Below are positions 6,823 through 63,862 of a DNA stretch of 64,000 nt, one piece after another (the stretch's first letter is position 1; each line of letters opens with the position of its first letter). The DNA lies in sequence record MH383160.1; one strand, written 5' to 3'. Made by a program: the position numbers and the translations under genes. Under the pieces are notes generated by a model, which was not told the origin of the DNA, did no database searches, and was given only the letters and a program-made list of their open reading frames with translations.

Positions 6823-7037
6823 TATTTCTTTCTCTTATATTTGTTAATAATATCTTGGGTAAGTGAAATAAAAATATATACTAATGTTACAGGCCAAATA
6901 ATAGCCATCAGTGCTGCTGTTTGGAGATTCATGATAATCATGATTTCATCTTTAAAACAACCCCAATTGAGTACTAGAAAGTTGGTTATAAATGTAACAA
7001 ATGCTACAAATCCATATATTGCAAAAAATGTTATCAT
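6822..7037 (-). CDS. small membrane protein
   Basis: 71 aa, two hydrophobic segments, IWPVTL. Confidence 0.7.
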   Translation of the reverse strand: MITFFAIYGFVAFVTFITNFLVLNWGCFKDEIMIIMNLQTAALMAIIWPVTLVYIFISLTQDIINKYKRKK

Positions 7038-7039
7038 AA

Positions 7040-7369
7040 TTATTCCTCATCATCCACTAAAACAAGATAATCCAAACTCAACTCGGTATCTATGTAACAA
7101 TCACAATTCAAGTACTCAATTTCAGCACCTATAGTTCTCCCATTCTTAAATATCTCAATGATTTTCATTCTAGTATTGGGATTAATGTGTTCAATGTCGT
7201 ATTCGTATTCAGGGTCAATATACTGACTTGTCATACGTTTGATGTATTGTTCCGAATATCGTACAGTTTTACCTATAAGATCATTACTCAACGTCTGATA
7301 AAAATCATCTTGAATTTTGAATAATGACCTATAAAAAATATTATGTTGAATTAGTGGTTTCATTGACAT
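7040..7369 (-). CDS. family C-like hypothetical protein
   Basis: DLIGKTVRY motif. Confidence 0.65.
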   Translation of the reverse strand: MSMKPLIQHNIFYRSLFKIQDDFYQTLSNDLIGKTVRYSEQYIKRMTSQYIDPEYEYDIEHINPNTRMKIIEIFKNGRTIGAEIEYLNCDCYIDTELSLDYLVLVDDEE

Positions 7370-16837: not shown

Positions 16838-17030
16838 GAACACGCTCACAATTAAGGCAATAAATGCACTCAATGTCAGGTCGCCATGATTTATCAAAAT
16901 CTTTGTGCTGTTCTTCGGTGTATTCTGCATCATCATTAATAGGGAAGAAATCACCAGCACCAGTCGCCCAGTCTGAATCTAAACGGAAACGAGCTAATTG
17001 AGTACTGTTACAATATGGACATTTATTCAA
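16830..17030 (-). CDS. small zinc-ribbon protein
   Basis: CPYC...CLNC. Confidence 0.65.
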   Translation of the reverse strand: MNKCPYCNSTQLARFRLDSDWATGAGDFFPINDDAEYTEEQHKDFDKSWRPDIECIYCLNCERVHD

Positions 17031-17307
17031 AATTTATTCCTTCTAACTGATATACGTTTAATGAAAATGACCCACTATTATTATCGCATCTGAAACACAG
17101 TGTTAAAGAACCATTAAAACTAACTACATCCGTACAGATACATTTTTCACCATTGGATATGATAGATTTTCCTATATATAAATCTCTTACTATAGTACGG
17201 TAATGTTGCCATAAAAAATAATACACACTTTCATAGTACTCATCTTTTACATATGATAAGTATAAGAATTTATAAAATACTTGTATTTCCTTTAAGTTGT
17301 TTTTCAT
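17023..17307 (-). CDS. family C (TYK subgroup) protein
   Basis: EIQVFYKFLYLSY...LYIGKSI. Confidence 0.7.
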   Translation of the reverse strand: MKNNLKEIQVFYKFLYLSYVKDEYYESVYYFLWQHYRTIVRDLYIGKSIISNGEKCICTDVVSFNGSLTLCFRCDNNSGSFSLNVYQLEGINFE

Positions 17308-17581
17308 TCTTCAATTCCAGTAAATTTACACCAATCCAATCAACATCACTATCAGTACTTAATTCCAATCGTAGCTTACCGCTATGACTAACAATATCGC
17401 GGAATTTGTATATTTTATTATCACGAACTATACACAAATCATGGTAATAATCATGTAATTCATCCAAAAACTTTATCCATACCGAACGATAGATTTCACT
17501 GTAGAGATATTCTCCAGCATCAACCGTAGCGTATTGGATATACAAAAATTTGTATGTGAATTGTATATCATTTAATAACAT
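17270..17581 (-). CDS. family C (TYK subgroup) protein
   Basis: LNDIQFTYKFLYIQY. Confidence 0.7.
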   Translation of the reverse strand: MLLNDIQFTYKFLYIQYATVDAGEYLYSEIYRSVWIKFLDELHDYYHDLCIVRDNKIYKFRDIVSHSGKLRLELSTDSDVDWIGVNLLELKNEKQLKGNTSIL

Positions 17582-17591
17582 ATGTAACCTC

Positions 17592-17903
17592 TTATAAATT
17601 CACCAACTTCACAACTTTAATCTCGATAAATCCCCTATCGGTTATTTCCTGAAATTGAACATGGATTATACCATTATATGATTGCACACCATAGAAATCG
17701 AATTTATCATTTCCATCGATAAAAGTACTGTAATTCTTTTTTATATATTCACCTACTGAATCTAAGTACTCAATATATAAATCAATAAATGGTTGTTCTT
17801 TGTATCGGTTATGTGAACCTATGTTGTTACTAACAAGGTATACATCATACAAATCATATAGGATCTTATAAGTGAATTGTATATCATTTAAATTTAATCC
17901 CAA
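17592..17903 (-). CDS. family C (TYK subgroup) protein
   Basis: LNDIQFTYKILYDLY. Confidence 0.7.
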   Translation of the reverse strand: MGLNLNDIQFTYKILYDLYDVYLVSNNIGSHNRYKEQPFIDLYIEYLDSVGEYIKKNYSTFIDGNDKFDFYGVQSYNGIIHVQFQEITDRGFIEIKVVKLVNL

Positions 17904-18160
17904 GGGAATATCTCCAACGGAATACTGGTAAATCCAAAATCAGTGTAGTACTGAACCTCAACTTTACCATCACGTCTAATGATTATATCAGAAAATTCTG
18001 CATGGTCATCACCAATAATAACAGTACTGAATTTTTTTTTAATCTTACCACGAATCGTATGAATCATTTCAGTGCCTGTGTCTTCTAGACTAGGGCTATC
18101 ATTGTCGTGTGCTAAATCTCGAATAATCTTGTATGTTAGTAGGAAATCTTTATAATTCAT
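17894..18160 (-). CDS. family C (TYK subgroup) protein
   Basis: MNYKDFLLTYKIIRDL. Confidence 0.7.
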   Translation of the reverse strand: MNYKDFLLTYKIIRDLAHDNDSPSLEDTGTEMIHTIRGKIKKKFSTVIIGDDHAEFSDIIIRRDGKVEVQYYTDFGFTSIPLEIFPWD

Positions 18161-18432
18161 ATGTCCACCAAATCTATACTATATCTTTCATTAGTATTAC
18201 TATCTATAAATGATAGTACTAATTTACCACCAAAACTATTAACTTGTTCTATCTTCTGTTTTTTACCACGAATGATTATCTCACTATTAACAAAATATTC
18301 ACGTATCATTATTAAGTGATTAATCCAGATAGTATGAGTGAATGTGTTTTCTCGTATTGTATTGAGATATCTTCCATTGTGATGTAAATCAAACAAAACA
18401 CTGTATGTATATTGTAGAACTTTATAATTCAT
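18157..18432 (-). CDS. family C (TYK subgroup) protein
   Basis: MNYKVLQYTYSVLFDL. Confidence 0.7.
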   Translation of the reverse strand: MNYKVLQYTYSVLFDLHHNGRYLNTIRENTFTHTIWINHLIMIREYFVNSEIIIRGKKQKIEQVNSFGGKLVLSFIDSNTNERYSIDLVDI

Positions 18433-38531: not shown

Positions 38532-39082
38532 AATAGTTCCTTATACATATTATGTACTTTACAAATCTCATTATAGTATTTCATATCAATATCATTTGTA
38601 TTAAAAACGGAAACAGACAATACCGCTAAATCATCAATGAAGTAATTATTATCGGCGTACTCTTTTAACTTATTGAACATATAGATGCATTTTATACTTA
38701 ATTCATCATGCAACACACTGTTCTGAAAAATATTCTCTTCAGTATTAGGAGATAAGTAATCTTCAATTATATACGATAAACTACTATCGCAATCTTTATA
38801 GATTGAAATTGATGGATGTAATGTGTCATACATTACACTAAACAGATCACCGTCATATGTGGATATTAAACTATTATTGGAAACAGTAGGATGATAATAT
38901 TTCAGTACTGAAAACTTTGAACAATCAGTGCAGTAAAAATGATCCATCCCTCGACGACTTTCGTATGAGAATAGTTTACTTGTATATTCAATCCCTTTGG
39001 TGCGACGGATTGTTTCATGCATTTCTGCACATTGCATTAAAATTACCATACGTTCAAACGCAAGATCTAAATCATCGTACAT
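38522..39082 (-). CDS. family A (FQ-module) protein
   Basis: TEENIFQNSVLHD. Confidence 0.75.
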   Translation of the reverse strand: MYDDLDLAFERMVILMQCAEMHETIRRTKGIEYTSKLFSYESRRGMDHFYCTDCSKFSVLKYYHPTVSNNSLISTYDGDLFSVMYDTLHPSISIYKDCDSSLSYIIEDYLSPNTEENIFQNSVLHDELSIKCIYMFNKLKEYADNNYFIDDLAVLSVSVFNTNDIDMKYYNEICKVHNMYKELLCQ

Positions 39083-39263
39083 AACGGATATCCTTCTTCA
39101 ACGAATTAATATATTCCAAAATAACTTGTTCCTGATATTGAGTTCCCAAGTACATCAGGACTTTCAACTCTTTGAATTCAGTACTATATGAGTCTGTTTG
39201 CATCATTCTAGTAGAATATATATTGAATAGTTTAGCAATGTCATTTTGGTCTATTATTTTCAT
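39072..39263 (-). CDS. family B (LGTxxQE) protein
   Basis: LMYLGTQYQEQ. Confidence 0.75.
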   Translation of the reverse strand: MKIIDQNDIAKLFNIYSTRMMQTDSYSTEFKELKVLMYLGTQYQEQVILEYINSLKKDIRYVR

Positions 39264-39459
39264 ATATTCTCTTCTGGATTAGTTCCTGTAAGTGCTGAAT
39301 ATAACCCTTCATTGCAACATCCTGTTTGTTAGAGCCAACGAAGAACAAGAGCTTAAAGTCATGGTAATCCATTTTTGGTTTAGTAGTGAACCATATGTCC
39401 CACACTGCACTCACAGTTCTCATGTATTCAATTCGATTAAATGTTTTTGAATACTTCAT
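39241..39459 (-). CDS. family B protein, divergent
   Basis: LFFVGSNKQDV. Confidence 0.7.
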   Translation of the reverse strand: MKYSKTFNRIEYMRTVSAVWDIWFTTKPKMDYHDFKLLFFVGSNKQDVAMKGYIQHLQELIQKRIYENNRPK

Positions 39460-51562: not shown

Positions 51563-51794
51563 TTATCTCATTCTGTAACTTAAGCATCAAAATTTGCATA
51601 TTAATTTTTTGTAAAAGGTGCTTGATAAATTTCTGTGCCATTTCTTCTTGTTCTTTTGTACCAAGATAAAATAACAGATTAAATTCTGATAATCGCAAAG
51701 AAAAATCTTCATCACCACCCTTTAAACAAAAATCCCTGTACTTTGTAGCGTACAAATATTGGTTTACCTTTTTATAATACCCTGTGTTTTGCAT
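51528..51794 (-). CDS. family B protein
   Basis: LFYLGTKEQEE. Confidence 0.75.
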   Translation of the reverse strand: MQNTGYYKKVNQYLYATKYRDFCLKGGDEDFSLRLSEFNLLFYLGTKEQEEMAQKFIKHLLQKINMQILMLKLQNEINEYESRNSSGS

Positions 51795-51982
51795 ACTATC
51801 TCCGTTCGCAACGAATTTATATAATAATGAACAAATTGTTCTTGTGAACGTGTTCCAAGAAAAATAAACATATCAAACTCTGTTGTTTTTAAATTCAATG
51901 CATCTTTTGTAAAATTCCTGTTGAATTCCCTGTACTTTTGGGTCTTCCATTCTTGATTAATTGTCTTGTATATCGATTTCAA
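51764..51982 (-). CDS. family B protein
   Basis: FIFLGTRSQEQ. Confidence 0.75.
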   Translation of the reverse strand: MKSIYKTINQEWKTQKYREFNRNFTKDALNLKTTEFDMFIFLGTRSQEQFVHYYINSLRTEIVCKTQGIIKR

Positions 51983-52277
51983 TGATTCTCCCTGACATAC
52001 CTTGTATTAGCTTATCATACATATCGAGCATCACTTTTTGAATATTAATTAGTACTGGCATCGTGCAAATATCAATGTCGTATACTAAGCTGTACTGGAA
52101 TAATTCATCTTCCTGCATTTGTACTAAATTAGGTAAAAGATAATTGTCTGCCTCTTCATCCTGGTACTTGAAATGCATAACACCATCCTTTTTGTACAAA
52201 AGAATGTCAATATCACCTAACTCTTCTGCATAACCAAAAATACATATACTCGATGTTTTTGCTATATTAAATTTCAT
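51957..52277 (-). CDS. family A short-type protein
   Basis: QEDELFQYSLVYD. Confidence 0.75.
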   Translation of the reverse strand: MKFNIAKTSSICIFGYAEELGDIDILLYKKDGVMHFKYQDEEADNYLLPNLVQMQEDELFQYSLVYDIDICTMPVLINIQKVMLDMYDKLIQGMSGRIIEIDIQDN

Positions 52278-53083
52278 GATTTATATTGTTCCTTAAAAAC
52301 ACCACAATGATAATTTTTATTGTATTGTGTAATACTATAATCACACGGCATTGTCCCGCACGAAGCTCTGTGTTTTAAACGTTCCAATACCTTATCGTAA
52401 TCTTTACTGAAAATGCCATTTTCATTGGGCGTAGCAATCATTAATGCTTGCTCATATAAATCTTTTGTTCTTGTTGAACCATGCGAATGTTTGTTAAAAT
52501 AAAATACATATTCAACTTCCCAATTACTTCTTAAATAGGATATTCCGTAATTGATAATCATATAATAATGTAAATCCTTGTAATAATTGAATGTCTTATC
52601 TGTATTAATCAAAATATATGAAGAACTATCATTGTCCTTAATAACAAATAAACGACCAATCTTATTTTCTTTATCTTTAACTAATTGTCTAATTTCATCA
52701 CCTTCTTCAAATTTACGATGCACTTCAATTACAGATTTAGCAATCCCAGTCTGTACTAAAGATTCATATGTTGCGTACATAAAATCACTTACATGACCTA
52801 AACCAACATCTTCTTTTCTTGGTGTCTCTGTTGTATTGACAAACATATTCAATAACTTTTGAATTGAAAAATCAGTACTGCAATCTTTATTAATTTTAAT
52901 TTTTTCTCGAATCTCTTCCTTTAATGCATTAATATATTGCTCTTGTGCTGCTTCCTGATAATTTGTACCAAGATATAAACTCAAGGCAACTGAACCTTTG
53001 TAAGATGCTGATTTCTTTAAATCACCAGAACTAAATTTTTTCATAATCAAATTGGTTGCTTCAGATTCTGTTAAAAATTTCAT
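52274..53083 (-). CDS. family B domain fused to a roughly 190 aa unknown domain
   Basis: N-terminal MKFLTESE...LYLGTNYQEAA then unrelated C-terminal region. Confidence 0.8.
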   Translation of the reverse strand: MKFLTESEATNLIMKKFSSGDLKKSASYKGSVALSLYLGTNYQEAAQEQYINALKEEIREKIKINKDCSTDFSIQKLLNMFVNTTETPRKEDVGLGHVSDFMYATYESLVQTGIAKSVIEVHRKFEEGDEIRQLVKDKENKIGRLFVIKDNDSSSYILINTDKTFNYYKDLHYYMIINYGISYLRSNWEVEYVFYFNKHSHGSTRTKDLYEQALMIATPNENGIFSKDYDKVLERLKHRASCGTMPCDYSITQYNKNYHCGVFKEQYKS

Positions 53084-54215: not shown

Positions 54216-54525
54216 TAGGCTCCTGTTTAGATTCTTTCATTAGTACTATCATCTTATGTACTAATGGCATAGGAAACTCTAAATCCCATACTAATGATTC
54301 CTGAAAGTATTCTTCTTCAGATAAAGTACTTAAATCTTTAATATCAACGTGCTTGTATATTTTATTTTCGTAATTAACAAATGATATATATAAATCACTA
54401 ACATAAGAATCATAGGTAATTGTGAATGGCTTACCCTTGTAATCCATTACATCTCTACATAGACTACTTTTGATATATGTATGTTCAAATGATTTATATA
54501 CCTTGAGTTGTATATTAGTTTTCAT
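54181..54525 (-). CDS. family A short-type protein
   Basis: DLSTLSEEEYFQESLVWD. Confidence 0.8.
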   Translation of the reverse strand: MKTNIQLKVYKSFEHTYIKSSLCRDVMDYKGKPFTITYDSYVSDLYISFVNYENKIYKHVDIKDLSTLSEEEYFQESLVWDLEFPMPLVHKMIVLMKESKQEPNGDYEEHIIEY

Positions 54526-54790
54526 ATTTCTCTTTATTAGCTTGTTTTGTTTTATGGTGAATTAAATCTATTAATGTAATCAAGTACAACGTCAAATAGT
54601 ACTCTTGTTGATCTGTACCTAATGATACAAAGAACTTGTGCTCATAGATTAAAACCTGTTTCTCTTCAAATGGACATTTAATCCTCTGTATAGGCTTAAG
54701 TAAATGATAGTACTTATTAAATCTATGATACATTTCTAGTTCTGTCAGTACTTTCATATTAAACACGTACTCCATTAGCAGTAGCATCAC
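54515..54790 (-). CDS. family B protein
   Basis: VSLGTDQQEY. Confidence 0.75.
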   Translation of the reverse strand: MMLLLMEYVFNMKVLTELEMYHRFNKYYHLLKPIQRIKCPFEEKQVLIYEHKFFVSLGTDQQEYYLTLYLITLIDLIHHKTKQANKEKYEN

Positions 54791-54980
54791 GTAAAGCTGT
54801 CAAATACTTCTGTACTGCTTGCTCTTGTTTATTTGTACCTAAAAGTATATACATCCATAATTCACTGTAATGTACATCTTCTGTATAAGGGTTGTTGTAA
54901 CTTTTTGATAATATAGCATCAAATTCAGATGCATGAACCCTTGTGAACTTAAGAATATCTTGTTGTGTTATGATTCTCAT
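54759..54980 (-). CDS. family B protein
   Basis: ILLGTNKQEQ. Confidence 0.8.
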   Translation of the reverse strand: MRIITQQDILKFTRVHASEFDAILSKSYNNPYTEDVHYSELWMYILLGTNKQEQAVQKYLTALRDATANGVRV

Positions 54981-55192
54981 ATCTTTTCCTGTACAATCTG
55001 TATAAGAATACCTATGTGTGAATTAACAGTTCTCTCTTGATGCTGTGTTCCTAAGAGTGTCAGTACTATCATATCTGAACGCAAAAGATTTTTTTCAAGT
55101 TCACTTATATCAGTTCTTGAATCAAGTGCCATATATTTGTGATTATTCTTCCTGAATAGTGCCAAGTACTCTTGATTTGATATTTCCTTCAT
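54977..55192 (-). CDS. family B protein
   Basis: TLLGTQHQER. Confidence 0.8.
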   Translation of the reverse strand: MKEISNQEYLALFRKNNHKYMALDSRTDISELEKNLLRSDMIVLTLLGTQHQERTVNSHIGILIQIVQEKI

Positions 55193-55410
55193 AGTTTATT
55201 CCTGATGCCATTTAAAAGTGCTCTAATATGCTCATTGACAAATCGCTCTTGGGAATCTGTTCCTAGAGTGAGTAGCAATCTTAAATCTGAACTTTTGATG
55301 TGATATTCTAAATCATTATTTGATTCTTGCATCAGTTTCTTAAAGGATGAGAAGTTTGCAGCCATTAGTTCAATGTATTCTGCTGTTCCTAGTGGTTTGT
55401 GTGTTGACAT
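55189..55410 (-). CDS. family B protein
   Basis: LTLGTDSQER. Confidence 0.8.
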   Translation of the reverse strand: MSTHKPLGTAEYIELMAANFSSFKKLMQESNNDLEYHIKSSDLRLLLTLGTDSQERFVNEHIRALLNGIRNKL

Positions 55411-55622
55411 TTGAGTTGTATTACCCTTTTGAGTGTATTAATGTAATTATACACATTGGCTTCTTGATAGTTTGTTCCTAGAGTAGCTTGAACATAGATT
55501 TCATTTAACTTAATAATTTTATCAGTATCTGGTAGTTTTGATGTGTTAATGGCAAATAACTTCAAAAACAGTCCATTTAAGATTGTTAGGTATTCTTCGT
55601 CGGTAATGATTCGCATTTGCAT
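55389..55622 (-). CDS. family B protein
   Basis: ATLGTNYQEA. Confidence 0.8.
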   Translation of the reverse strand: MQMRIITDEEYLTILNGLFLKLFAINTSKLPDTDKIIKLNEIYVQATLGTNYQEANVYNYINTLKRVIQLKCQHTNH

Positions 55623-55834
55623 TGGATAAACCTTTTTAGTTCTTTGATGTAATCATTAATATTGCATTCTTGGTAGTTAGTTCCCAGTGTAGCTTGAACA
55701 TAGATTTCACTTACTAGAATACTTATTTCATCATCTGGTAATTTCATGCTTTTTGTTATAAACAACTTTAGAATTAAACTACTTAATAGTTGGTTGTATT
55801 CTGTGGGTGAAATGATTTTCATTTTCATTTGCAT
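55586..55834 (-). CDS. family B protein
   Basis: ATLGTNYQEC. Confidence 0.8.
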   Translation of the reverse strand: MQMKMKIISPTEYNQLLSSLILKLFITKSMKLPDDEISILVSEIYVQATLGTNYQECNINDYIKELKRFIQCKCESLPTKNT

Positions 55835-56040
55835 TTTCTCAGTACTGATTCTTTAAGTTCATTGATGTAGTCCTCAACGAATTGTTCTTGTAGGTTTGTT
55901 CCGAGATATAACAGTACTCTTAAATCTGCTCTAAGTACTTCTTTGTCATCTTCATCTATATCAGACAGTGTTATGTTTAAGAATTTACTTGAATTCTCTA
56001 CAAGTAATATTACTTCTTCACCTTCTCTTAAAATTTTCAT
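55825..56040 (-). CDS. family B protein
   Basis: LYLGTNLQEQ. Confidence 0.8.
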   Translation of the reverse strand: MKILREGEEVILLVENSSKFLNITLSDIDEDDKEVLRADLRVLLYLGTNLQEQFVEDYINELKESVLRKCK

Positions 56041-56246
56041 AATCTTAGTGCTTTCCTCGACAGTAGGTACAGGTAACGTTCAGTGCATTGTTCTTGATAG
56101 TTTGTTCCTAATAAATGAACTAAATGTTGTTCAGCTATAGAAAGCTGCTTGTCTTCATAACAAGCGTATCGTTGTTTCCTATGGTATTCTTTATTGATAA
56201 CATCAAGGATGATAACACCGTATTCGTCATCTGTCAAGTGTTTCAT
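56037..56246 (-). CDS. family B protein
   Basis: HLLGTNYQEQ. Confidence 0.8.
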   Translation of the reverse strand: MKHLTDDEYGVIILDVINKEYHRKQRYACYEDKQLSIAEQHLVHLLGTNYQEQCTERYLYLLSRKALRL

Positions 56247-56484
56247 GCTTTTTTCTTTTTCTTATATGTTTAGTTAAAAGGTATATTAGTTTTCTGATGT
56301 ATTCTTCCTGATAGTTTGTTCCTAAGAGTGCAAGAAGTTTTGCTTCAACTAAAGCTAATTGACGTTCTTCGAATGTGTGTTCCAGTATGTACTTGGGGTT
56401 TGATTTTTTAGCGTAAGCACTATTAGTCTTCATTACAATCTTATGATATTCATTAGCTGTTAGGATTTTTAAATACTTGATCAT
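56227..56484 (-). CDS. family B protein
   Basis: ALLGTNYQEE. Confidence 0.8.
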   Translation of the reverse strand: MIKYLKILTANEYHKIVMKTNSAYAKKSNPKYILEHTFEERQLALVEAKLLALLGTNYQEEYIRKLIYLLTKHIRKRKKHETLDR

Positions 56485-56704
56485 GTATCTTTTCCTTTAT
56501 AGAGAATTTAAGATATCGAAGCATACTTTCAATGTAATACTCTTGTCTGTCAGTGCCAAGAAAGTACATGAGTTGAATGTATAAAACTTCTGCACTCCTT
56601 TCCGCTGGAGACTTGTTTGTGTCGTTTGGAAGTTGATTTGTATGTTTTCTTGATTTAATTAGTCGTTCTTTTAACTCATCGTCTGTTAAGTATTTCATTT
56701 TCAT
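56453..56704 (-). CDS. family B protein (recent triplet)
   Basis: PAERSAEVL...FLGTDRQEY. Confidence 0.8.
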   Translation of the reverse strand: MKMKYLTDDELKERLIKSRKHTNQLPNDTNKSPAERSAEVLYIQLMYFLGTDRQEYYIESMLRYLKFSIKEKIHDQVFKNPNS

Positions 56705-56930
56705 TTACTTTTTCCTTAATAGTAATTTTAAGATATCTAATCATACGTGCAACATATTCCTCTTGTCTATCAGTTCCCAGAAGATATGGTAGTGATTGGA
56801 ATAATACTTCTGCACTCCTTTCTGCTGGGGTTTGGTTTAGGTCAATTGGACGTTTATTGGTATATCTCTTGGCACGAACTAATCTCTCGACGTATTCATT
56901 ATAGGTTAAGTATATCATTTCATTTTGCAT
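56676..56930 (-). CDS. family B protein (recent triplet)
   Basis: PAERSAEVL...LLGTDRQEE. Confidence 0.8.
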   Translation of the reverse strand: MQNEMIYLTYNEYVERLVRAKRYTNKRPIDLNQTPAERSAEVLFQSLPYLLGTDRQEEYVARMIRYLKITIKEKVNENEILNRR

Positions 56931-57156
56931 TTACTTTTTCCTTAATAGTAATTTTGAGATATTTAATTATACGTTCAATGTGATACTCTTGCCTATCAGT
57001 TCCAAGAAGGTATGGTAATCTTTGGAATAAAACTTCCGCACTCCTTTCTGCTGGGGTTTGATTTGTGTTGTGAGGAAGTTTATTTGTAAGTCTTTTGGAT
57101 TTATCTAGTCTTTCTGTTAACTCATCATGTGTTAAGTATATCATTTCATTTTGCAT
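56920..57156 (-). CDS. family B protein (recent triplet)
   Basis: PAERSAEVL...LLGTDRQEY. Confidence 0.8.
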   Translation of the reverse strand: MQNEMIYLTHDELTERLDKSKRLTNKLPHNTNQTPAERSAEVLFQRLPYLLGTDRQEYHIERIIKYLKITIKEKVNAK

Positions 57157-57383
57157 TTAATGTTCCTTACGTAAATTGTCTGGATTAAACAATCAATCCA
57201 AGTTTGAATATATTGGTTTTGATACTGTGTGCCTAAGAGACTCTGCATTTTAAACTCTGCTTCAAGTTCATATCTCTTTTCTATAGAAAAGCTCAAATGA
57301 CCATATTCTTTATCGTATCTTCTCAGTGCTTCCCCAATTCTATTAAATCTTTCTGCTAATCTGATGTTATTCACAATATTCAT
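57141..57383 (-). CDS. family B protein
   Basis: SLLGTQYQNQ. Confidence 0.8.
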   Translation of the reverse strand: MNIVNNIRLAERFNRIGEALRRYDKEYGHLSFSIEKRYELEAEFKMQSLLGTQYQNQYIQTWIDCLIQTIYVRNIKCKMK

Positions 57384-57670
57384 CGATCAGTATACCTCAG
57401 TGGTTGGGTCATTTGATAAAAGTACAGCTTACCTTTGATTTCCAGTAGTAACTCCGCGATTAAGCGATTTACTTCTGTATCTTGATAGTTTGTTCCTAAG
57501 AATACACCCATCTTTAACTCACGCATCATAATCATTTTCTTACTGTGTTGGATTTCTGGGTTGTGATAAATTGTATTACGTTTGTGCGTAATTTTTGTCA
57601 TACGCTCGGTATATTCATCTTTACTTAAATTGATCATTTGCATGTTAATTACCCTTACATTTATTTTCAA
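57380..57670 (-). CDS. family B protein
   Basis: VFLGTNYQDT. Confidence 0.8.
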   Translation of the reverse strand: MKINVRVINMQMINLSKDEYTERMTKITHKRNTIYHNPEIQHSKKMIMMRELKMGVFLGTNYQDTEVNRLIAELLLEIKGKLYFYQMTQPLRYTDR

Positions 57671-57875
57671 TACTATTCATGAGTTCTATAAGATAGTTTT
57701 CTACCTTACCTTCCTGATAGTTAGTCCCTAGGAAGTTGCACAACACGGCTTCTATGATTTTGATTTTCCTGATATCAGGCTTCAATCTTTTGTTATTGAA
57801 TATTTGAATCCTTATATCTCTGGATGCATTTAAACGTTTTTGATATTCATGGTAAGTTAAATGAATCATTTTCAT
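57645..57875 (-). CDS. family B protein
   Basis: NFLGTNYQEG. Confidence 0.8.
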   Translation of the reverse strand: MKMIHLTYHEYQKRLNASRDIRIQIFNNKRLKPDIRKIKIIEAVLCNFLGTNYQEGKVENYLIELMNSIENKCKGN

Positions 57876-58090
57876 TTACGTTTAACCTCTCGCTGGAGGG
57901 CATCAATTAACATCAGTACAGCATTCTCTTGATAGTTTGTTCCTAAGACTGAAAGCATCTTTATCTCATTTACTAAAATCAACTTCTTTGAGGGTTCAAT
58001 AATGTGACTATCATAAACGGCCTTACGTGCTGGATAAGTTTTCGCCAGTATAACATAAAATTCGTCTTTACTTAAATTAATCATTTGCAT
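57872..58090 (-). CDS. family B protein
   Basis: SVLGTNYQEN. Confidence 0.8.
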   Translation of the reverse strand: MQMINLSKDEFYVILAKTYPARKAVYDSHIIEPSKKLILVNEIKMLSVLGTNYQENAVLMLIDALQREVKRK

Positions 58091-58299
58091 TTACTTTTAA
58101 CCTCTTTCTGTAGAGCGTCAATCCATAGATCTACATACATTTGTTGATAGTTTGTGCCTAAGAGTGCACCTACATAGAGTTCAGTTACTAGTGCGTGCTT
58201 AAGGTTAGCTTGGATGCTCTTATCGCTTGATATCATTCTCCTTCTGCTTCCACATGTTTTCAGGAGTCTGATGTATTCAAAGCCTTGTAAATTTCTCAT
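58081..58299 (-). CDS. family B protein
   Basis: ALLGTNYQQM. Confidence 0.8.
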   Translation of the reverse strand: MRNLQGFEYIRLLKTCGSRRRMISSDKSIQANLKHALVTELYVGALLGTNYQQMYVDLWIDALQKEVKSKCK

Positions 58300-58511
58300 A
58301 TTTTGGATACCACCTTGTTACGTAAGGAACTTAATAATACGTCAGTGTAGATGTTTTGATAGTTTGTCCCTACGAATACACCCAACTTCATTTCAGCTAT
58401 TATAACACATTTGTCCTCTTGTGCAATAGATTTGTTTAACACAATACTATACACTTTTGATTTGATAGTTTGTAACCTCCAATGATACTGATACTCATTA
58501 AGGATTATCAT
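58296..58511 (-). CDS. family B protein
   Basis: VFVGTNYQNI. Confidence 0.8.
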   Translation of the reverse strand: MIILNEYQYHWRLQTIKSKVYSIVLNKSIAQEDKCVIIAEMKLGVFVGTNYQNIYTDVLLSSLRNKVVSKI

Positions 58512-58746
58512 TCTCTTTCCTCCAGATTTCGGTTCTCATGTGTTGGCAGTGTGCTTCGATGAACATATCTATTGATTTGGCAATTGCGTTTTTATCAGTG
58601 CCTGTCATCAGTACAAGCATCTCGGCCTCACAGTGAAGTAAACGCATGATATCATAGGGTAATATTTCAGATACAGTGTCATAGTGTTTCTGTGCCAGTG
58701 TCTGCAATAGTTTACAATACATTTTGTGATTTAGTCTTTGTCGCAT
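58498..58746 (-). CDS. family B protein, divergent
   Basis: LMTGTDKNAI. Confidence 0.7.
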   Translation of the reverse strand: MRQRLNHKMYCKLLQTLAQKHYDTVSEILPYDIMRLLHCEAEMLVLMTGTDKNAIAKSIDMFIEAHCQHMRTEIWRKENDNP

Positions 58747-59003
58747 TGTTTATTCCATTCTTTTTTGGCCTTGATGGTTTTATATTGGATTTGGTTTCTT
58801 AATGCTGATAAGTATCGTTGAATGAACAGATCTTGATAGTTTGTTCCAATGAATTTCATAAGATAAAGTTCACCGTTGATAACATCCACTTCAGGTGCAC
58901 CATATAAGGCATTGTTTTTTCTAAGGGCATGGATTAAAGAGAATAGGGCAGTTTGATACTCAACTCCTGATAAAGTCTTCATGTTTTGTGAGCAAATAAT
59001 CAT
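58731..59003 (-). CDS. family B protein
   Basis: KFIGTNYQDL. Confidence 0.8.
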   Translation of the reverse strand: MIICSQNMKTLSGVEYQTALFSLIHALRKNNALYGAPEVDVINGELYLMKFIGTNYQDLFIQRYLSALRNQIQYKTIKAKKEWNKQCDKD

Positions 59004-59217
59004 CTAGTTTATCCTGTATAACATTCGTTAATTGTTCGATATATTCTGTGCAAAACTTATCTTGATATTGAGTCCCCATAAAGTACAGCAACCATAGCTC
59101 ATTAACTTTAGCTCGCATTTGGTTCCATGTAAGGCTGGGGTCACCGTAGACTATCCTTGTGATGGGGGTTAGTTTACGAATTATAGTTTCAAATTCATCA
59201 TCAGTTAAGTGTTTCAT
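58960..59217 (-). CDS. family B protein
   Basis: YFMGTQYQDK. Confidence 0.8.
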   Translation of the reverse strand: MKHLTDDEFETIIRKLTPITRIVYGDPSLTWNQMRAKVNELWLLYFMGTQYQDKFCTEYIEQLTNVIQDKLDDYLLTKHEDFIRS

Positions 59218-59432
59218 TTACATTTGTCCCTTATTAGATCAGTGAGGGCAACTATGTGTGCAACAACATACTCTTCCTGAAAGTTCGTCCCCAGTACAGC
59301 CATCATGCGTATATCGGTGGTGTTTATCCTGTGTTCCCTTACACATAAACCTTCTGTGTGAGGAAGTGTAAAATATTTGTTTATTGCAGCAACGATAATT
59401 TTATTCTTCTCGGAGTTACTTAAATGTTTCAT
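59214..59432 (-). CDS. family B protein
   Basis: AVLGTNFQEE. Confidence 0.8.
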   Translation of the reverse strand: MKHLSNSEKNKIIVAAINKYFTLPHTEGLCVREHRINTTDIRMMAVLGTNFQEEYVVAHIVALTDLIRDKCK

Positions 59433-59641
59433 AGTTTACTCCTGATATAATTCTGAAGTGCAATTAAGTATTCCCCTACATAATACACCTGAAAGTCTGT
59501 ATCAAGGAATGCACCCATAAGTAAATCTTTTTCTAATACCCTTGATAAGTTAAGGTCTGCATTTGAAAGGTATATAAGTAAGATTTCACCCTGTGCGGAA
59601 TTGAAACGTTTCTTATATTCTTCTGATGTTAAAAAAATCAT
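59429..59641 (-). CDS. family B protein
   Basis: AFLDTDFQVY. Confidence 0.8.
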   Translation of the reverse strand: MIFLTSEEYKKRFNSAQGEILLIYLSNADLNLSRVLEKDLLMGAFLDTDFQVYYVGEYLIALQNYIRSKL

Positions 59642-59853
59642 AATTTGCTCCTGATATATTTCTCAAGAGATGACAAATACTTTTCCTCATAATACTTCTG
59701 ATAGTCTGTTCCTAAGAATGCACCCAATAGTATATCATTTTCCAATACCTCGGCTAAGTTTAAATCAGAAGTCTCTTCGTATATTATGAGGATTTCAAGT
59801 TGTCTGGCAGCGATGCGTTCAGTATATTGATATGAGTTTTCTATAATAATCAT
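59638..59853 (-). CDS. family B protein
   Basis: AFLGTDYQKY. Confidence 0.8.
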   Translation of the reverse strand: MIIIENSYQYTERIAARQLEILIIYEETSDLNLAEVLENDILLGAFLGTDYQKYYEEKYLSSLEKYIRSKL

Positions 59854-60059
59854 AGTTTACTCTTAATATCTTCTATTAAAAATCGAATCCATTCTTCAAC
59901 ATAATCTTCCTGATGGTTTGTGTTCAGTACAGCCAACATGCGGATCTCTGCTCTTGCAACTTCAATTTCAGTTTTAGGAAGGTCTTTGCTGATATCCACC
60001 ATTAAGTCCATGTATTTCAAGATAAGACCGTATGATTGGGTTCGTGTTATAGTTTTCAT
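59850..60059 (-). CDS. family B protein
   Basis: AVLNTNHQED. Confidence 0.8.
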   Translation of the reverse strand: MKTITRTQSYGLILKYMDLMVDISKDLPKTEIEVARAEIRMLAVLNTNHQEDYVEEWIRFLIEDIKSKL

Positions 60060-60256
60060 TGTTTCCTCGTGGACAATATTTTATTTTTCAATGTATCCAT
60101 ATATTGAATCACCCATCTTTCCTGATAGTTAGTTCCCAAAGTAATCAAAAGGTATAACTCCATTCGTTCTACGTGTGTGTCTGTATTATAAATCTTTGTG
60201 AAGTTTTTACGTAACAGTGATTGATATTCTTCTTTATTTAAAATACGCATTTTCAT
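60056..60256 (-). CDS. family B protein
   Basis: ITLGTNYQER. Confidence 0.8.
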   Translation of the reverse strand: MKMRILNKEEYQSLLRKNFTKIYNTDTHVERMELYLLITLGTNYQERWVIQYMDTLKNKILSTRKQ

Positions 60257-60450
60257 AGTTTACTCGTTATATCTTCAATTAAATACCAAATCCAATCGTT
60301 GACATACCTTTCCTGAAAGTTAGTTCCAATGAATAGTGCCATAATTAATTCACGCTTATAGGCAATACCACGGTCATGGGACTTATACATTATCATAGCC
60401 ATGTTATTGATAAGTCTTTCGTGGTGCTGTTCTTTAGTTAAAATACGCAT
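60253..60450 (-). CDS. family B protein, first of the array
   Basis: LFIGTNFQER; SD GGAG. Confidence 0.8.
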   Translation of the reverse strand: MRILTKEQHHERLINNMAMIMYKSHDRGIAYKRELIMALFIGTNFQERYVNDWIWYLIEDITSKL

Positions 60451-60480
60451 AGGGACTCCATTAAAAATAATATCAATCCT

Positions 60481-60508
60481 ATAATATACGATTCGTATAA
60501 AAAATCAA
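60481..60508 (-). promoter_or_regulatory. probable promoter for the family B array
   Basis: TTGATT-16-TATTAT. Confidence 0.5.
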
Positions 60509-60699: not shown

Positions 60700-60909
60700 T
60701 TAATCCTTCGTTACGCTAACGATTATCTGTGTATCCCCGTAGTCCTGCCATACTTCCACGCCATCGGTCGCCCTGGTTAGTCGTGCTGTCATCTGCTTAA
60801 TGGTCTTAGGCTTTAGTGGAACCTGTTGCAGTACTGTACGCATAGCATCATTGACGTTATCATGTACGCCTGCAATAGTACCTAGAACGCTGTATACTGT
60901 ATAGAACAT
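60700..60909 (-). CDS. small hypothetical (probable early) protein
   Basis: 69 aa, SD GGAG, upstream GC hairpin 60934-60953. Confidence 0.7.
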   Translation of the reverse strand: MFYTVYSVLGTIAGVHDNVNDAMRTVLQQVPLKPKTIKQMTARLTRATDGVEVWQDYGDTQIIVSVTKD

Positions 60910-60977
60910 ATGTATGTACTCCTGATATAGTTAAGGCCGCTAGAGAGCGGCCTATGATGTTTGGTGATGTGTATTGC

Positions 60978-61379
60978 TTACAGCCCTAAGATAGTACGTG
61001 CTTCGTTACGTTCCGTACACAGCTGCATGATGTGAGCAAGTAAGTCCTTGCTAATGTATCCGGTGTTCATAGCTTCACGAATAGATACATCATAAGCACC
61101 GAACCCCGTGCGAACGATACGCACATCATTCAGGTTAGTATTATAGATACCGCCGAGATCAACGGCTTCGAATACTACATCAACAGAATATTCATTGTTG
61201 CCATCGTGGAAGTTTTCCAGTGCAATAGTATTGGATACCGCCCAACGTTTGCAGTTTCCAATGATGCGGCACTGTTCCGGTTGGATAGTGCCATTACTTA
61301 CAGCGTACTCCAGTGCATCTTTACCAAAAGTCCGAGCCAGTACTAAAACGTCAGCGAAGGAAGTGATTGAGAAGGTCAT
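60978..61379 (-). CDS. hypothetical (probable early) protein, start re-assigned to MTFSI
   Basis: SD AAGGAG 7 nt before ATG; the track's N-terminus is promoter/leader sequence. Confidence 0.75.
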   Translation of the reverse strand: MTFSITSFADVLVLARTFGKDALEYAVSNGTIQPEQCRIIGNCKRWAVSNTIALENFHDGNNEYSVDVVFEAVDLGGIYNTNLNDVRIVRTGFGAYDVSIREAMNTGYISKDLLAHIMQLCTERNEARTILGL

Positions 61380-61399
61380 GATAAAACTCCTTAATTTAG

Positions 61400-61470
61400 G
61401 AGGGAGAACCATTTCCCCCTCTCTATGTAAAACATTATACATGAATCTAAGTACTATGCAAGTACTTTTT
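61400..61470 (-). promoter_or_regulatory. promoter-hairpin cassette
   Basis: A-tract, TTGCAT-16-TATAAT, GTTTTACATAGAG, G/C hairpin. Confidence 0.8.
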
Positions 61471-61854: not shown

Positions 61855-61883
61855 ATTATCGCAGTACTGATATACTTTGTCAA
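61855..61883 (-). promoter_or_regulatory. sigma70-type promoter
   Basis: TTGACA-17-GATAAT with upstream A-tract. Confidence 0.7.
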
Positions 61884-62246: not shown

Positions 62247-62267
62247 AATGTTTTACTCCAAACTATT

Positions 62268-62338
62268 GGCGGGAGAACTATTCCCCCGCTCTATGTAAAA
62301 CATTATACATTACTGGTTAGTACTGTCAAATAGTTTTT
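62268..62338 (-). promoter_or_regulatory. promoter-hairpin cassette
   Basis: TTGACA-16-TATAAT, GTTTTACATAGAGCGGGGGAATAGTTCTCCCGC. Confidence 0.85.
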
Positions 62339-62914: not shown

Positions 62915-62982
62915 GGGGGAGGATATCTCCCCCTATGCAAAACATTATACTTTGTTTTAGTTATTATGCAAGTACTTTTTTC
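62915..62982 (-). promoter_or_regulatory. promoter-hairpin cassette
   Basis: TTGCAT-16-TATAAT, hairpin GGGGGAG-ATATC-CTCCCCC. Confidence 0.8.
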
Positions 62983-63796: not shown

Positions 63797-63862
63797 GGGG
63801 AGAACTATTCTCCCCTTGATGTAAACTATTATACAGTACTGATATACTTTGTCAATACTTAA
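63797..63862 (-). promoter_or_regulatory. promoter-hairpin cassette
   Basis: TTGACA-16-TATAAT, GGGGAGAA-TAG-TTCTCCCC. Confidence 0.85.

What the first reader, a model, noticed from the sequence alone, without database searches (positions are those of the whole stretch)
54515..60450. 27 consecutive small helical genes built on an LGT(N/D/Q)xQE turn
Seen: every ORF from 54515 to 60450 is 65-96 aa with the layout M(K/R/I)x(L/I)(T/S)xxEY, helix, variable loop, helix, LGT(N/D/Q)(Y/F/x)Q(E/D/N), then a helix with Y/W-I/L-x-x-L. Period is about 220 bp, genes are joined mostly by ATGA-type overlaps, and one probable promoter sits at 60481-60508. Five further copies lie at 39072, 39241, 51528, 51764 and 52274. 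The first helix and loop are hypervariable while the second half is constrained. Inference: a diversified binder repertoire on a constant three-helix scaffold, such as anti-defence inhibitors, decoys or toxin-neutralising proteins.
Basis: partly seen in the sequence, partly recalled or inferred. Interest (0 to 1): 0.8.

Follow-up and report, generated by a model that had tools for sequence, protein, structure and literature searches.

The report
Tandem small-protein family in jumbo coliphage
A giant E. coli phage carries 27 back-to-back genes, plus 5 scattered ones, for small three-helix proteins that share one core but have different surfaces; they are kept by selection and are probably made early in infection, but their function is still unknown.

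Summary
The window is Escherichia phage UB (Asteriusvirus, 353 kb). Bases 54515-60450 hold 27 contiguous minus-strand genes of one family (PHROG 4148, unknown function). AlphaFold2 gives a very confident three-helix bundle (pLDDT 97.8). No solved or predicted structure outside the family matches it informatively, and no sequence library names it.

The conserved residues are the core plus two helix-capping boxes (TxxE, GTxxQ). Surfaces differ widely between paralogues (pI 4.4-9.8).

The array is old and syntenic across Asteriusvirus (22-32 copies). Klebsiella phage RaK2 has 12 dispersed copies; five other jumbo-phage lineages have none.

Orthologues are under purifying selection (dN/dS 0.23 at scaffold positions, 0.44 elsewhere). 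There is no hypervariable face. Phages differ by gene-sized swaps of old alleles and by whole-gene gain or loss.

The array starts about 99 bp after the left terminal repeat, behind a conserved sigma-70-type promoter and downstream of consensus host-type promoters. It is absent from the phAPEC6 virion proteome.

An early, non-structural, host-directed binder repertoire is the best reading, but it is untested. One 2017 paper may already mention the array in a single sentence.

The parts
60481..60508 (-). Sigma-70-type promoter-like element (TTGATT, 16 nt spacer, TATTAT) about 30 nt upstream of gene 1
   Evidence: 9/12 match. It is conserved at the same position in Ecwhy_1, vB_Ec-M-J, phAPEC6, ph0011 and Turkey5, with TTGACT as the first hexamer. 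Function is inferred.
60456..60459 (-). Shine-Dalgarno GGAG of gene 1
   Evidence: Read from the sequence; conserved in the relatives that align there (UB, Turkey5, Ecwhy_1, vB_Ec-M-J, phAPEC6)
60253..60450 (-). g01, family member, 65 aa (the copy that was modelled)
60056..60250 (-). g02, 64 aa (alternative start at 60256 gives an ATGA overlap)
59850..60059 (-). g03, 69 aa
59638..59853 (-). g04, 71 aa, acidic (pI 4.4); 53% identical to g05
59429..59641 (-). g05, 70 aa (has D in place of the motif G)
59214..59432 (-). g06, 72 aa
58960..59217 (-). g07, 85 aa
58731..58982 (-). g08, 83 aa (longest ORF starts at 59003); replaced by an old allele in phAPEC6 (65% aa identity, dS 0.71)
58498..58746 (-). 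g09, 82 aa; degenerate motif with a 6-residue insertion, yet low dN/dS (0.19-0.30), among the lowest in the array
58296..58511 (-). g10, 71 aa
58081..58299 (-). g11, 72 aa
57872..58084 (-). g12, 70 aa (alternative start 58090)
57645..57869 (-). g13, 74 aa (alternative start 57875)
57380..57637 (-). g14, 85 aa (longest ORF starts with TTG at 57670)
57141..57383 (-). g15, 80 aa; allele swapped between phages (47% to phAPEC6, 99% to Ecwhy_1)
56920..57144 (-). g16, 74 aa; recent triplet with g17 and g18 (52-72% identity); no reciprocal orthologue in SD-15_S21, vB_Ec-M-J, phAPEC6, A4 or Turkey5 (missing from the nucleotide alignment in SD-15_S21 and vB_Ec-M-J)
56676..56918 (-). g17, 80 aa; missing in ph0011
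56453..56698 (-). g18, 81 aa
56227..56484 (-). g19, 85 aa, the most basic copy (charge +8.9)
56037..56246 (-). g20, 69 aa; old-allele swap (66% to phAPEC6, dS 1.17; 94% to A4)
55825..56040 (-). g21, 71 aa, acidic (pI 4.5)
55586..55822 (-). g22, 78 aa; 55% identical to g23; missing in SD-15_S21
55389..55616 (-). g23, 75 aa
55189..55410 (-). g24, 73 aa
54977..55192 (-). g25, 71 aa
54759..54980 (-). g26, 73 aa; the only copy with pairwise dN/dS well above 1 (1.6-2.1) in three of six comparisons, based on few substitutions
54515..54757 (-). g27, 80 aa (longest ORF starts with GTG at 54790); last gene of the array
52274..53083 (-). Outlier: 269 aa fusion of an N-terminal family domain (residues 1-63) with a C-terminal domain related to RaK2 ORF380
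51764..51982 (-). Outlier copy, 72 aa
51528..51794 (-). Outlier copy, 88 aa, matching only the C-terminal half of the profile
39241..39459 (-). Outlier copy, about 72 aa, matching only the C-terminal half of the profile
39072..39263 (-). Outlier copy, 63 aa

Best explanation
This is a lineage-specific multigene family of about 30 small, soluble, non-structural three-helix proteins. It grew by local tandem duplication in the ancestor of the Asteriusvirus jumbo phages. The 27 tandem copies form one compact operon, partly translationally coupled, that starts directly behind the left direct terminal repeat. A sigma-70-type promoter precedes it, and a block of consensus host-type promoters lies further upstream. 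The genes are therefore most likely transcribed by host RNA polymerase early in infection. All copies keep the same hydrophobic core and two helix-capping boxes, but each has its own surface, and selection conserves each one separately. The most likely function is a set of host-directed protein binders for host takeover or counter-defence. Each paralogue would have a different partner, and phages would exchange them as gene-sized cassettes. Shown here: the family, the fold, its distribution, purifying selection, the mosaic pattern, the position in the genome, the promoter-like elements, and absence from the virion. Inferred: early expression, protein binding, and host or defence targets.
For: Family and array. 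Fold: pLDDT 97.8, pTM 0.81, helices 6-24, 29-39 and 46-64, with a beta-bridge between residues 2 and 43. The conserved columns are the core (L4, Y9, L13, V30, L35, L37, F40, L41, V50, Y53, I54, L57, I61) and the T5xxE8 and G42-T43-xx-Q46 caps. No conserved pocket-like set of polar residues is evident beyond these caps (inference). Surfaces differ: pI 4.4-9.8, and mean paralogue identity is 29%. Selection: pooled dN/dS is 0.32-0.45, with 0.23 at scaffold columns, 0.44 at variable columns and 1.0 in the tails. All reading frames are open in the 7 verified relatives examined. Translation signals: a Shine-Dalgarno-like 4-mer precedes 16 of 27 starts against a 14% background (p 8e-8), and there are 12 ATGA overlaps. 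Position: the array starts 99 bp after the annotated DTR in vB_Ec-M-J and about 93 bp after it in fEgEco12. Promoters: the element before gene 1 is conserved. Perfect TTGACA-N16-18-TATAAT sites number 4 in the window, all on the coding strand, against 0.28 expected. Two of them, plus an 11/12 site, lie just upstream of the array. Analogy: in the related jumbo phage PA5oct, the small DTR genes are the early class by RNA-seq (PMC7318152). Not structural: none of gp467c-gp489c appears among the 62 phAPEC6 virion proteins. Cassette exchange: gene-sized blocks of 50-75% nt identity sit among blocks of about 100%, and the swapped alleles have high dS and low dN/dS.
Against: There is no direct evidence of transcription timing, translation or any binding partner. 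Contigs from wastewater RNA libraries cover about 70% of the array, but DNA carry-over cannot be excluded. No similarity was found to any known anti-defence, host-takeover or regulatory protein. There is no excess of non-synonymous change and no hypervariable face between orthologues, which is not what a fast arms race predicts. dN/dS is no lower than in neighbouring accessory genes (0.30-0.50). Single copies are dispensable in nature: g16, g17, g18, g22 and g23 are each missing in some phage. The UB promoter match is weak (9/12).
Confidence: 0.4

Rival explanations
1. Genome filler. The copies are near-neutral products of tandem duplication that only expanded the genome to fill a larger capsid, as Hua et al. 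proposed for jumbo phages, and they have no individual function.
For: Hua et al. [quoted passage not shown] Adjacent copies are more alike than distant ones (0.34 vs 0.29, p 1e-4). Individual copies are lost in some phages. dN/dS is moderate, at 0.32-0.45.
Against: All copies stay open at dS up to 0.5 (A4), and beyond saturation in Turkey5. Scaffold columns have dN/dS of 0.23 while the tails sit at 1.0, so selection acts on the fold. Order is conserved across the genus. Shine-Dalgarno signals are kept. Paralogues have diverged to 29% identity without decaying.
Confidence: 0.1
2. The proteins act on nucleic acid or on the phage's own gene expression, as small DNA- or RNA-binding regulators. The N-terminal strand followed by helices joined by a G-T-N turn recalls ribbon-helix-helix proteins, and the last two helices resemble a helix-turn-helix.
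For: The N-terminal strand and the G-x-(S/T/N)-like turn are visible. Sixteen of 27 copies are basic, with pI above 8.
Against: The model has three helices and an intramolecular strand pairing, not the two-helix dimeric RHH. Neither Foldseek nor VIA-align returns an RHH or HTH protein, and neither do the profile searches. Five copies are clearly acidic (pI 4.4-5.3). The conserved polar residues are explained as helix caps.
Confidence: 0.12
3. The paralogues assemble with one another into a hetero-oligomeric intracellular structure. Translational coupling would give roughly equal amounts, and the conserved end of the bundle would be the shared interface.
For: There are 12 ATGA overlaps and tight packing. 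One end of the bundle is conserved: the N-terminus, the T5xxE8 cap and the LGTNYQE turn.
Against: Copy number varies from 22 to 32 between phages, and single copies are lost. This fits poorly with a fixed assembly. The one complex prediction (g01 with g02) gave no verdict and cannot be used either way.
Confidence: 0.1
4. The proteins are binders whose targets are competing phages or other mobile elements (superinfection exclusion or inter-phage conflict) rather than host proteins or host defence systems.
For: The same structural and evolutionary evidence as for the best explanation. Exchange of old alleles among co-circulating phages would fit frequency-dependent conflict.
Against: Nothing here separates this from host-directed binding. 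No known exclusion protein is similar.
Confidence: 0.13

Closest known systems
PHROG 4148 (with phrog_28039): uncharacterised proteins of 121Q, PBECO4 and phAPEC6 (121Q genes 319-341, phAPEC6 gp467c-gp489c)
   Same: This is the same family. 26 of 27 copies match at E down to 1.6e-25. Order is syntenic across the genus.
   Different: Nothing is known about it: every record annotates these genes as hypothetical. The UB record annotates only 16 CDS across the 27 genes.
[quoted passage not shown] 2017, mBio (PMC5646251)
   Same: Probably this array (32 copies by profile), seen in a phage of the same species group and read as tandem duplication.
   Different: It is one sentence without coordinates. 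It could instead refer to the second 31-member family found here. No fold, selection analysis, position or function was given.
The roughly 35-copy zinc-ribbon expansion of Bacillus phage G (Iyer et al. 2021, PMC7824862)
   Same: A lineage-specific expansion of a small domain in a jumbo phage.
   Different: The fold is unrelated and the host is Gram-positive. It was proposed to be DNA-binding or a set of transcription factors. The present family has no metal ligands.
Blocks of small early genes at phage genome ends: PA5oct DTR early genes (PMC7318152); SPO1 host-takeover module and T5 pre-early genes (from general knowledge)
   Same: Small genes of unknown function, co-oriented at or next to the terminal repeat and driven by host-type promoters.
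   Different: Those blocks are made of unrelated genes, not one expanded family. Early timing is measured for them and only inferred here.
Terminal multigene families of large eukaryotic DNA viruses, such as ASFV MGF110/360/505 and poxvirus gene accordions (from general knowledge)
   Same: Tandem paralogue arrays near a genome end, variable copy number between isolates, and exchange by recombination.
   Different: The hosts are eukaryotes and the folds are unrelated. Their role in host range and immune evasion is shown by experiment, whereas here it is a hypothesis.
Small three-helix-bundle binder domains, such as S. aureus Sbi-IV / Efb-C and the protein A Z domain
   Same: About 60 residues with three helices. 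These were the best Foldseek rows (6rmu, TM 0.51), but at E about 6, which is not significant.
   Different: There is no detectable homology, and the extra N-terminal strand pairing is absent from them. The resemblance is generic.

Membership tests
PHROG 4148 | Significant full-length match to the family profile | tested here: met
   26 of 27 copies match, best E 1.6e-25. Three of the outliers tested also match.
Ribbon-helix-helix (Arc/MetJ/CopG) DNA-binding proteins | An N-terminal strand followed by exactly two helices joined by a G-x-S/T/N turn, about 45 residues | tested here: not met
   A strand and a G-T-N turn are present, but the model has three helices (6-24, 29-39, 46-64) and is 64-85 residues long.
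Ribbon-helix-helix (Arc/MetJ/CopG) DNA-binding proteins | Structural or profile similarity to solved RHH proteins | tested here: not met
   No RHH chain appears in Foldseek PDB (best E 4.8), in VIA-align (best Z 5.5, unrelated helical proteins) or in the PDB profile search.
Ribbon-helix-helix (Arc/MetJ/CopG) DNA-binding proteins | Obligate dimer with an intersubunit two-stranded sheet | tested here: inconclusive
   The monomer model pairs the N-terminal strand within the chain (residue 2 with residue 43). The only complex job gave no verdict.
Tetratricopeptide (TPR) repeats | A 34-residue helix-hairpin repeat with the W-L-G-Y / A-F-A-P signature, detectable by profile | tested here: not met
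   The family does contain L-G-x-x-Y. However, no TPR model matches in NCBIfam or the PDB profiles. G-T lies in a non-helical turn. Atlas TPR rows reach only TM 0.52-0.57 over part of much longer proteins.
Known anti-defence proteins (anti-CRISPR, Ocr/ArdA-type DNA mimics, anti-CBASS/Thoeris sponges) | Sequence or fold similarity to a characterised member | tested here: not met
   No annotated PHROG, PDB chain or BFVD model other than the family itself matches. No dedicated anti-defence library was available, so distant membership stays open.
Known anti-defence proteins (anti-CRISPR, Ocr/ArdA-type DNA mimics, anti-CBASS/Thoeris sponges) | Inhibition of a defence system in vivo | not testable with these tools
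   This needs plating assays.
Virion structural or inner-body proteins | Detection in purified particles | tested here: not met
   The phAPEC6 virion proteome (62 proteins, including one of 4.7 kDa) lists none of gp467c-gp489c (PMC7247149).
Early (host-RNA-polymerase) phage genes | A sigma-70-type promoter and a position at the leading genome end | tested here: met
   A conserved promoter-like element precedes gene 1. Consensus promoters lie upstream. The array starts 93-99 bp after the left DTR.
Early (host-RNA-polymerase) phage genes | Transcripts present in the first minutes of infection | not testable with these tools
   Only metagenomic contigs from RNA libraries were available, and they are inconclusive.
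Diversity-generating (targeted hypermutation) systems | Ongoing variation confined to a variable region | tested here: not met
   Many copies are 99-100% identical between UB, phAPEC6 and SD-15_S21. Substitutions are spread evenly with dN/dS below 1. A reverse transcriptase or template repeat was not searched for.

The most novel reading that the evidence does not exclude
The array is a natural library of about 30 single-domain binders built on one minimal three-helix scaffold. Each binder would neutralise a different host defence or host factor, they would be made together in the first minutes of infection, and jumbo phages would trade them as gene-sized cassettes. That would be a phage counterpart of the terminal immune-evasion multigene families of large eukaryotic viruses, built on a fold not seen in any characterised protein.
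Probability: 0.22. Interest if true: 0.85.

Novelty: new member of a known kind. Interest (0 to 1): 0.55.

Why it matters
Most genes of jumbo phages have no known role, and the Asteriusvirus group is being proposed for phage therapy. In this window, 62 of 158 minus-strand ORFs of at least 50 aa belong to just two expanded families, and this one is the more compact and better defined. If the copies are early host-directed binders, the array offers about 30 ready-made small proteins with high-confidence models. Each could point to a host target or a defence system, and together they would show how phages keep and exchange a standing repertoire. If they turn out to be dispensable filler, that bears on the capsid-size ratchet idea for how jumbo genomes grow. 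Either way the question can be tested directly in E. coli K-12, which phage Sharanji, a close relative, infects.

Tried and rejected
- **Whole genome file:** none is held for this window. The phage record was searched through locus handles instead.
- **Fold searches of the g01 model:**
  - PDB Foldseek gave nothing below E 4.8.
  - BFVD returned only the family itself.
  - ESM Atlas returned only partial TM 0.5-0.58 rows in long helical repeat proteins.
  - VIA-align against 48,161 chains gave a best Z of 5.5, below the noise level stated for helical bundles.
- **Sequence libraries:** PDB profile, PADLOC and NCBIfam gave only chance-level rows.
- **Protein atlas by features:** no usable hit.
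- **Complex prediction, g01 with g02:** no verdict (score 0.01; the partner was poorly folded without an alignment). It is not evidence either way.
- **Expression from public reads:**
  - Three wastewater RNA libraries hold short contigs over 21-22 of 30 bins.
  - Contigs cannot show strand or level, and DNA carry-over is possible, so this is inconclusive.
- **Fusion protein 52274-53083 as a functional clue:**
  - Its C-terminal domain matches only a hypothetical protein of RaK2-like Klebsiella phages.
  - It matches nothing solved.
  - Word-based homologue searches returned only its own cluster, so no alignment could be built and it was not folded.
- **Link between the two big families:** hhalign probability 0.1, so they are unrelated.
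- **Model of the second family:** only pLDDT 66, and its fold search gave a best Z of 4.0.
- **RHH, TPR, hypermutation and virion-protein readings:** considered and rejected, as set out in the membership table.
- **Positive selection:**
  - Only g26 shows pairwise dN/dS well above 1 (1.6-2.1).
  - That rests on dS of 0.02-0.06, which is too few changes to count.

Full report
**What the window is.** Bases 54515-60450 are 100% identical to Escherichia phage UB (MH383160.1, positions 187477-193412). UB is a 353 kb myovirus of the genus Asteriusvirus, species PBECO4. Thirty-six phage records hold the same stretch at 60-100% identity. All are Escherichia (32) or Salmonella (4) jumbo phages. Every gene under the match is annotated as hypothetical, and the UB record calls only 16 CDS across it.

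**Check of the observation.** The ORF list shows 27 contiguous minus-strand ORFs from 60450 down to 54515. The period is 220 bp, and 5921 of 5936 bases are coding. The minus strand has 27 stop-free stretches of at least 64 codons, against 5 on the plus strand.

- The T of the LGT turn is invariant.
- G, Q and L57 are conserved at 93-96%.
- M1, L4, E8 and Y9 are conserved at 59-85%.

A profile of the 27 finds each copy at E 1e-20 to 1e-26. A search of the whole UB record finds 32 matches and none outside the window.

The junctions and translation signals look like this:
- With the first in-frame start, 13 of 26 junctions are ATGA overlaps.
- With the Met that fits the family, 12 are ATGA overlaps, 6 are gaps of 1-7 nt and 8 are overlaps of 14-32 nt.
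- A Shine-Dalgarno-like 4-mer lies 4-18 nt upstream of 16 of 27 starts, against 14% of all positions (p 8e-8).

**The fold.** AlphaFold2, using the 27 paralogues as the alignment, gives pLDDT 97.8 and pTM 0.81 for g01. It places helices at 6-24, 29-39 and 46-64, and a beta-bridge between residue 2 and the invariant T43.

Read against this model, the conserved columns fall into two groups:
- A hydrophobic core with i, i+3/4, i+7 spacing on helix 3 (V50, Y53, I54, L57, I61), together with L4, Y9, L13, V30, L35, L37, F40 and L41.
- Two N-capping boxes, T5-x-x-E8 for helix 1 and T43-x-x-Q46 for helix 3. G42 ends helix 2.

That the conserved polar residues are structural caps rather than an active site is my inference from standard helix-capping rules. 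I had no coordinates to measure.

The most variable part between paralogues is the second half of helix 1, a loop of variable length, and the start of helix 2. By bundle topology this part lies at the opposite end from the conserved N-terminus and LGT turn. The C-terminal K/S-K-L overlaps the ribosome-binding site and start codon of the next gene, so part of its conservation may come from dual coding. Isoelectric points run from 4.4 to 9.8 and net charge from -6.5 to +8.9.

**What it resembles.** Nothing informative.
- PHROGs place 26 of 27 copies in phrog_4148 and 12 also in phrog_28039, both of unknown function.
- Foldseek against the PDB has no row below E 4.8.
- BFVD returns only 121Q, UB and PBECO4 family members.
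- The ESM Atlas gives partial matches of TM 0.5-0.58 inside long helical repeat proteins.
- The exhaustive VIA-align search peaks at Z 5.5, which the tool itself rates as noise for helical bundles.
- PDB profiles, PADLOC and NCBIfam give chance-level rows.

**How wide the family is.** A profile search of 1.84 billion representatives finds only 83 clusters at 50% identity. All are 52-121 aa apart from the 269 aa fusion, and all carry the same turn motif.

Profile counts per genome:

| Phage | Copies |
|---|---|
| UB | 32 |
| phAPEC6 | 32 |
| vB_Ec-M-J | 31 |
| Salmonella phage SD-15_S21 | 30 |
| A4 | 25 |
| Turkey5 | 22 |
| Klebsiella phage RaK2 (Alcyoneusvirus; small dispersed groups, 244.9-263 kb) | 12 |
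| CBB and GAP32 (Mimasvirus) | 0 |
| Munch | 0 |
| fENko-Kae01 | 0 |
| fHe-Yen9-03 (Eneladusvirus) | 0 |
| PA5oct | 0 |

Two metagenomic contigs from other lineages also carry arrays:
- L018: 101 kb, 35% GC, 15 copies, 12 of them in tandem.
- L020: 40.8 kb, 29% GC, 6 copies.

**Evolution.**
- **Synteny.** Reciprocal best hits are syntenic across the genus, so the array predates the Asteriusvirus radiation.
- **Duplication.** Adjacent copies are more alike than random pairs (0.34 against 0.29, permutation p 1e-4). A few duplications are recent: g16/g17/g18 at 52-72% identity, g04/g05 at 53% and g22/g23 at 55%.
- **Selection overall.** Nei-Gojobori counts pooled over orthologues give dN/dS of 0.32-0.45 against each of seven relatives. 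The N- and C-terminal halves give the same value.
- **Selection by column class.** Scaffold columns give 0.23, variable columns 0.44 and the C-terminal tails 1.02.
- **Comparison with neighbours.** Neighbouring non-family genes give 0.30-0.50. Most genes of the terminal-repeat part give 0.0-0.3 (one reaches 0.41 against A4).
- **The atypical copy.** g09, which has a degenerate motif, still has low dN/dS, among the lowest in the array at 0.19-0.30.
- **Mosaic pattern.** Between UB and phAPEC6 most genes are 98-100% identical at the nucleotide level. In contrast, g08, g15, g16 and g20 are only 50-77% identical, with dS of 0.7 up to saturation and low dN/dS where it could be estimated (0.25-0.32 for g08 and g20). 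g15 of UB is 99% identical to the Ecwhy_1 copy.
- **Presence and absence.** Whole genes come and go (g16, g17, g18, g22, g23).
- **Contrast with the repeat.** Against Turkey5, the terminal-repeat genes have dS of 0.04-0.5, while the array genes are saturated at 31-72% amino-acid identity, most of them below 50%.

Taken together, this is a standing set of about 27 distinct, individually constrained paralogues. Each has a few old allele classes that recombination shuffles in gene-sized units. It is not a rapidly hypermutating repertoire, and it is not decaying junk.

**Position and expression signals.**
- **Distance from the repeat.** In vB_Ec-M-J the annotated direct terminal repeat ends at 21,525 and gene 1 of the array starts at 21,624, on the forward strand of that record. 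In fEgEco12 (repeat of 20,993 bp, PMC13070987) the mapping gives about 93 bp. Window bases above about 60549 therefore correspond to the end of the repeat.
The element at 60481-60508 is a 9/12 match in UB, and such matches are no more common here than in shuffles. However, the element is conserved about 30 nt before gene 1 in five relatives, with TTGACT, a 16-nt spacer and TAnnAT. This includes Turkey5, whose array proteins are only 31-72% identical.
- **Consensus promoters upstream.** The small genes upstream are each preceded by near-perfect host-type promoters. There are 12/12 sites at 62302-62329 and 63828-63855 and an 11/12 site with an extended -10 at 61855-61883. Three of these upstream regions carry a conserved hairpin downstream of the promoter, in the 5' leader.
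- **Against chance.** Perfect TTGACA-N16-18-TATAAT occurs 4 times in the window, always on the coding strand, against 0.28 expected.
- **Other lines of evidence.**
  - Close relatives encode their own sigma factor (PMC11895373).
  - In the related jumbo phage PA5oct, the small repeat-region genes are the early class by RNA-seq (PMC7318152).
  - None of the array products is among the 62 phAPEC6 virion proteins.

Early expression by host polymerase is therefore a reasonable inference, not a measurement. Public RNA libraries from wastewater hold short contigs over most of the array, but these cannot exclude DNA.

**Explanation.** I commit to the following. This is a lineage-specific, tandemly expanded family of early, non-structural three-helix proteins whose constant core carries paralogue-specific surfaces. 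They most likely act as binders of different host or defence proteins. My confidence in the functional part is about 0.4.

The rivals are:
- Near-neutral genome filler (0.10). Open frames, scaffold-specific constraint and conserved order argue against it.
- Nucleic-acid-binding regulators (0.12). The G-T-N turn and N-terminal strand recall ribbon-helix-helix proteins, but helix number, fold searches and the acidic members argue against it.
- Co-assembly of paralogues (0.10). Variable copy number argues against it, and the complex prediction gave no verdict.
- Binders aimed at competing phages (0.13). This cannot be told apart from the best explanation here.

**Novelty.** The family is already a PHROG. 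Hua et al. [quoted passage not shown] That is probably this array, although a second 31-member family in the same region fits the count equally well. Wagemans et al. 2020 repeat the remark for phAPEC6. Iyer et al. 2021 describe the phage G expansion but not this one.

New in this report are the fold, the family limits, the selection and mosaic pattern, the position behind the terminal repeat and the promoter context. As a kind of thing it is another lineage-specific multigene expansion in a large virus, so I rate it a new member of a known kind. Interest is moderate because the function is open and easily tested.

Noticed in passing
window 13837-54525 (dense from 29562), minus strand: A second multigene family of 31 paralogues, 103-194 aa. 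They share a C-terminal motif D-x5-EEExFQxSLVxD in which F and Q are invariant. The family starts right after the last array gene and surrounds the five outlying copies. It falls in PHROGs 13866, 12674, 9317, 15629 and others, all of unknown function. It is unrelated to the array family by hhalign. The AF2 model reaches only pLDDT 66 and has no fold match. With the array family, it accounts for 62 of the window's 158 minus-strand ORFs of at least 50 aa.
   Followed up: partly
window 17023-18432, minus strand: A third small tandem family: five adjacent paralogues of 88-103 aa.
   Followed up: no
window 61855-61883, 62302-62329, 63828-63855 and leaders near 62260, 63240, 63790 (minus strand): Consensus or near-consensus sigma-70 promoters with A-rich upstream tracts lie in the part that corresponds to the terminal repeat. 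Three of these upstream regions carry a conserved G+C-rich hairpin of the form GAGCGGGGGAATAGTTCTCCCGC in the 5' leader. Similar TTGCAT-type promoters precede the genes that start at 62940 and 63227.
   Followed up: partly
window 52274-53083, minus strand: A 269 aa protein fuses a family domain (residues 1-63) to a domain of about 200 aa. That domain is 40% identical to the stand-alone RaK2 ORF380. Among phage records the C-terminal domain is found only in UB, EC.P1 and six RaK2-like Klebsiella phage records, so the fusion is seen only in UB and EC.P1.
   Followed up: partly
window 54515-60450 as annotated in MH383160.1: The public UB record annotates only 16 CDS across the 27-gene array, several of them truncated. 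Relatives annotate 24-30.
   Followed up: yes
window 60934-60953: A perfect 8-bp G+C-rich palindromic hairpin (AGGCCGCT, 4-nt loop, AGCGGCCT) lies between the genes 60978-61442 and 60700-60909. On the coding strand it has no T-run after it.
   Followed up: no
L018:5777-9927 and L020:1860-6243 (metagenome contigs): Uncultured phage contigs outside the named genera carry their own arrays of the family: 15 copies with 12 in tandem, and 6 copies. Their N-terminal motifs are more divergent but they keep the LGT-x-x-Q turn.
   Followed up: partly
window 56934-57389, 58092-59688, 59593-59846, 59635-59848 (run X1, probably DNA, and run X5, a wastewater RNA library): Public contigs of related strains skip 212, 252, 454 or 1595 bases inside the array, which is about 1, 1, 2 and 7 gene units. 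These could be real unit-sized deletions by recombination between copies, or assembly collapse across paralogues.
   Followed up: no
L005:6194-7012 (phage A4) and L009 near 6976-7176 (SD-15_S21): The junction between the terminal repeat and the array varies. A4 has an extra 819-nt gene inserted before gene 1. SD-15_S21 lacks the promoter-bearing segment.
   Followed up: no
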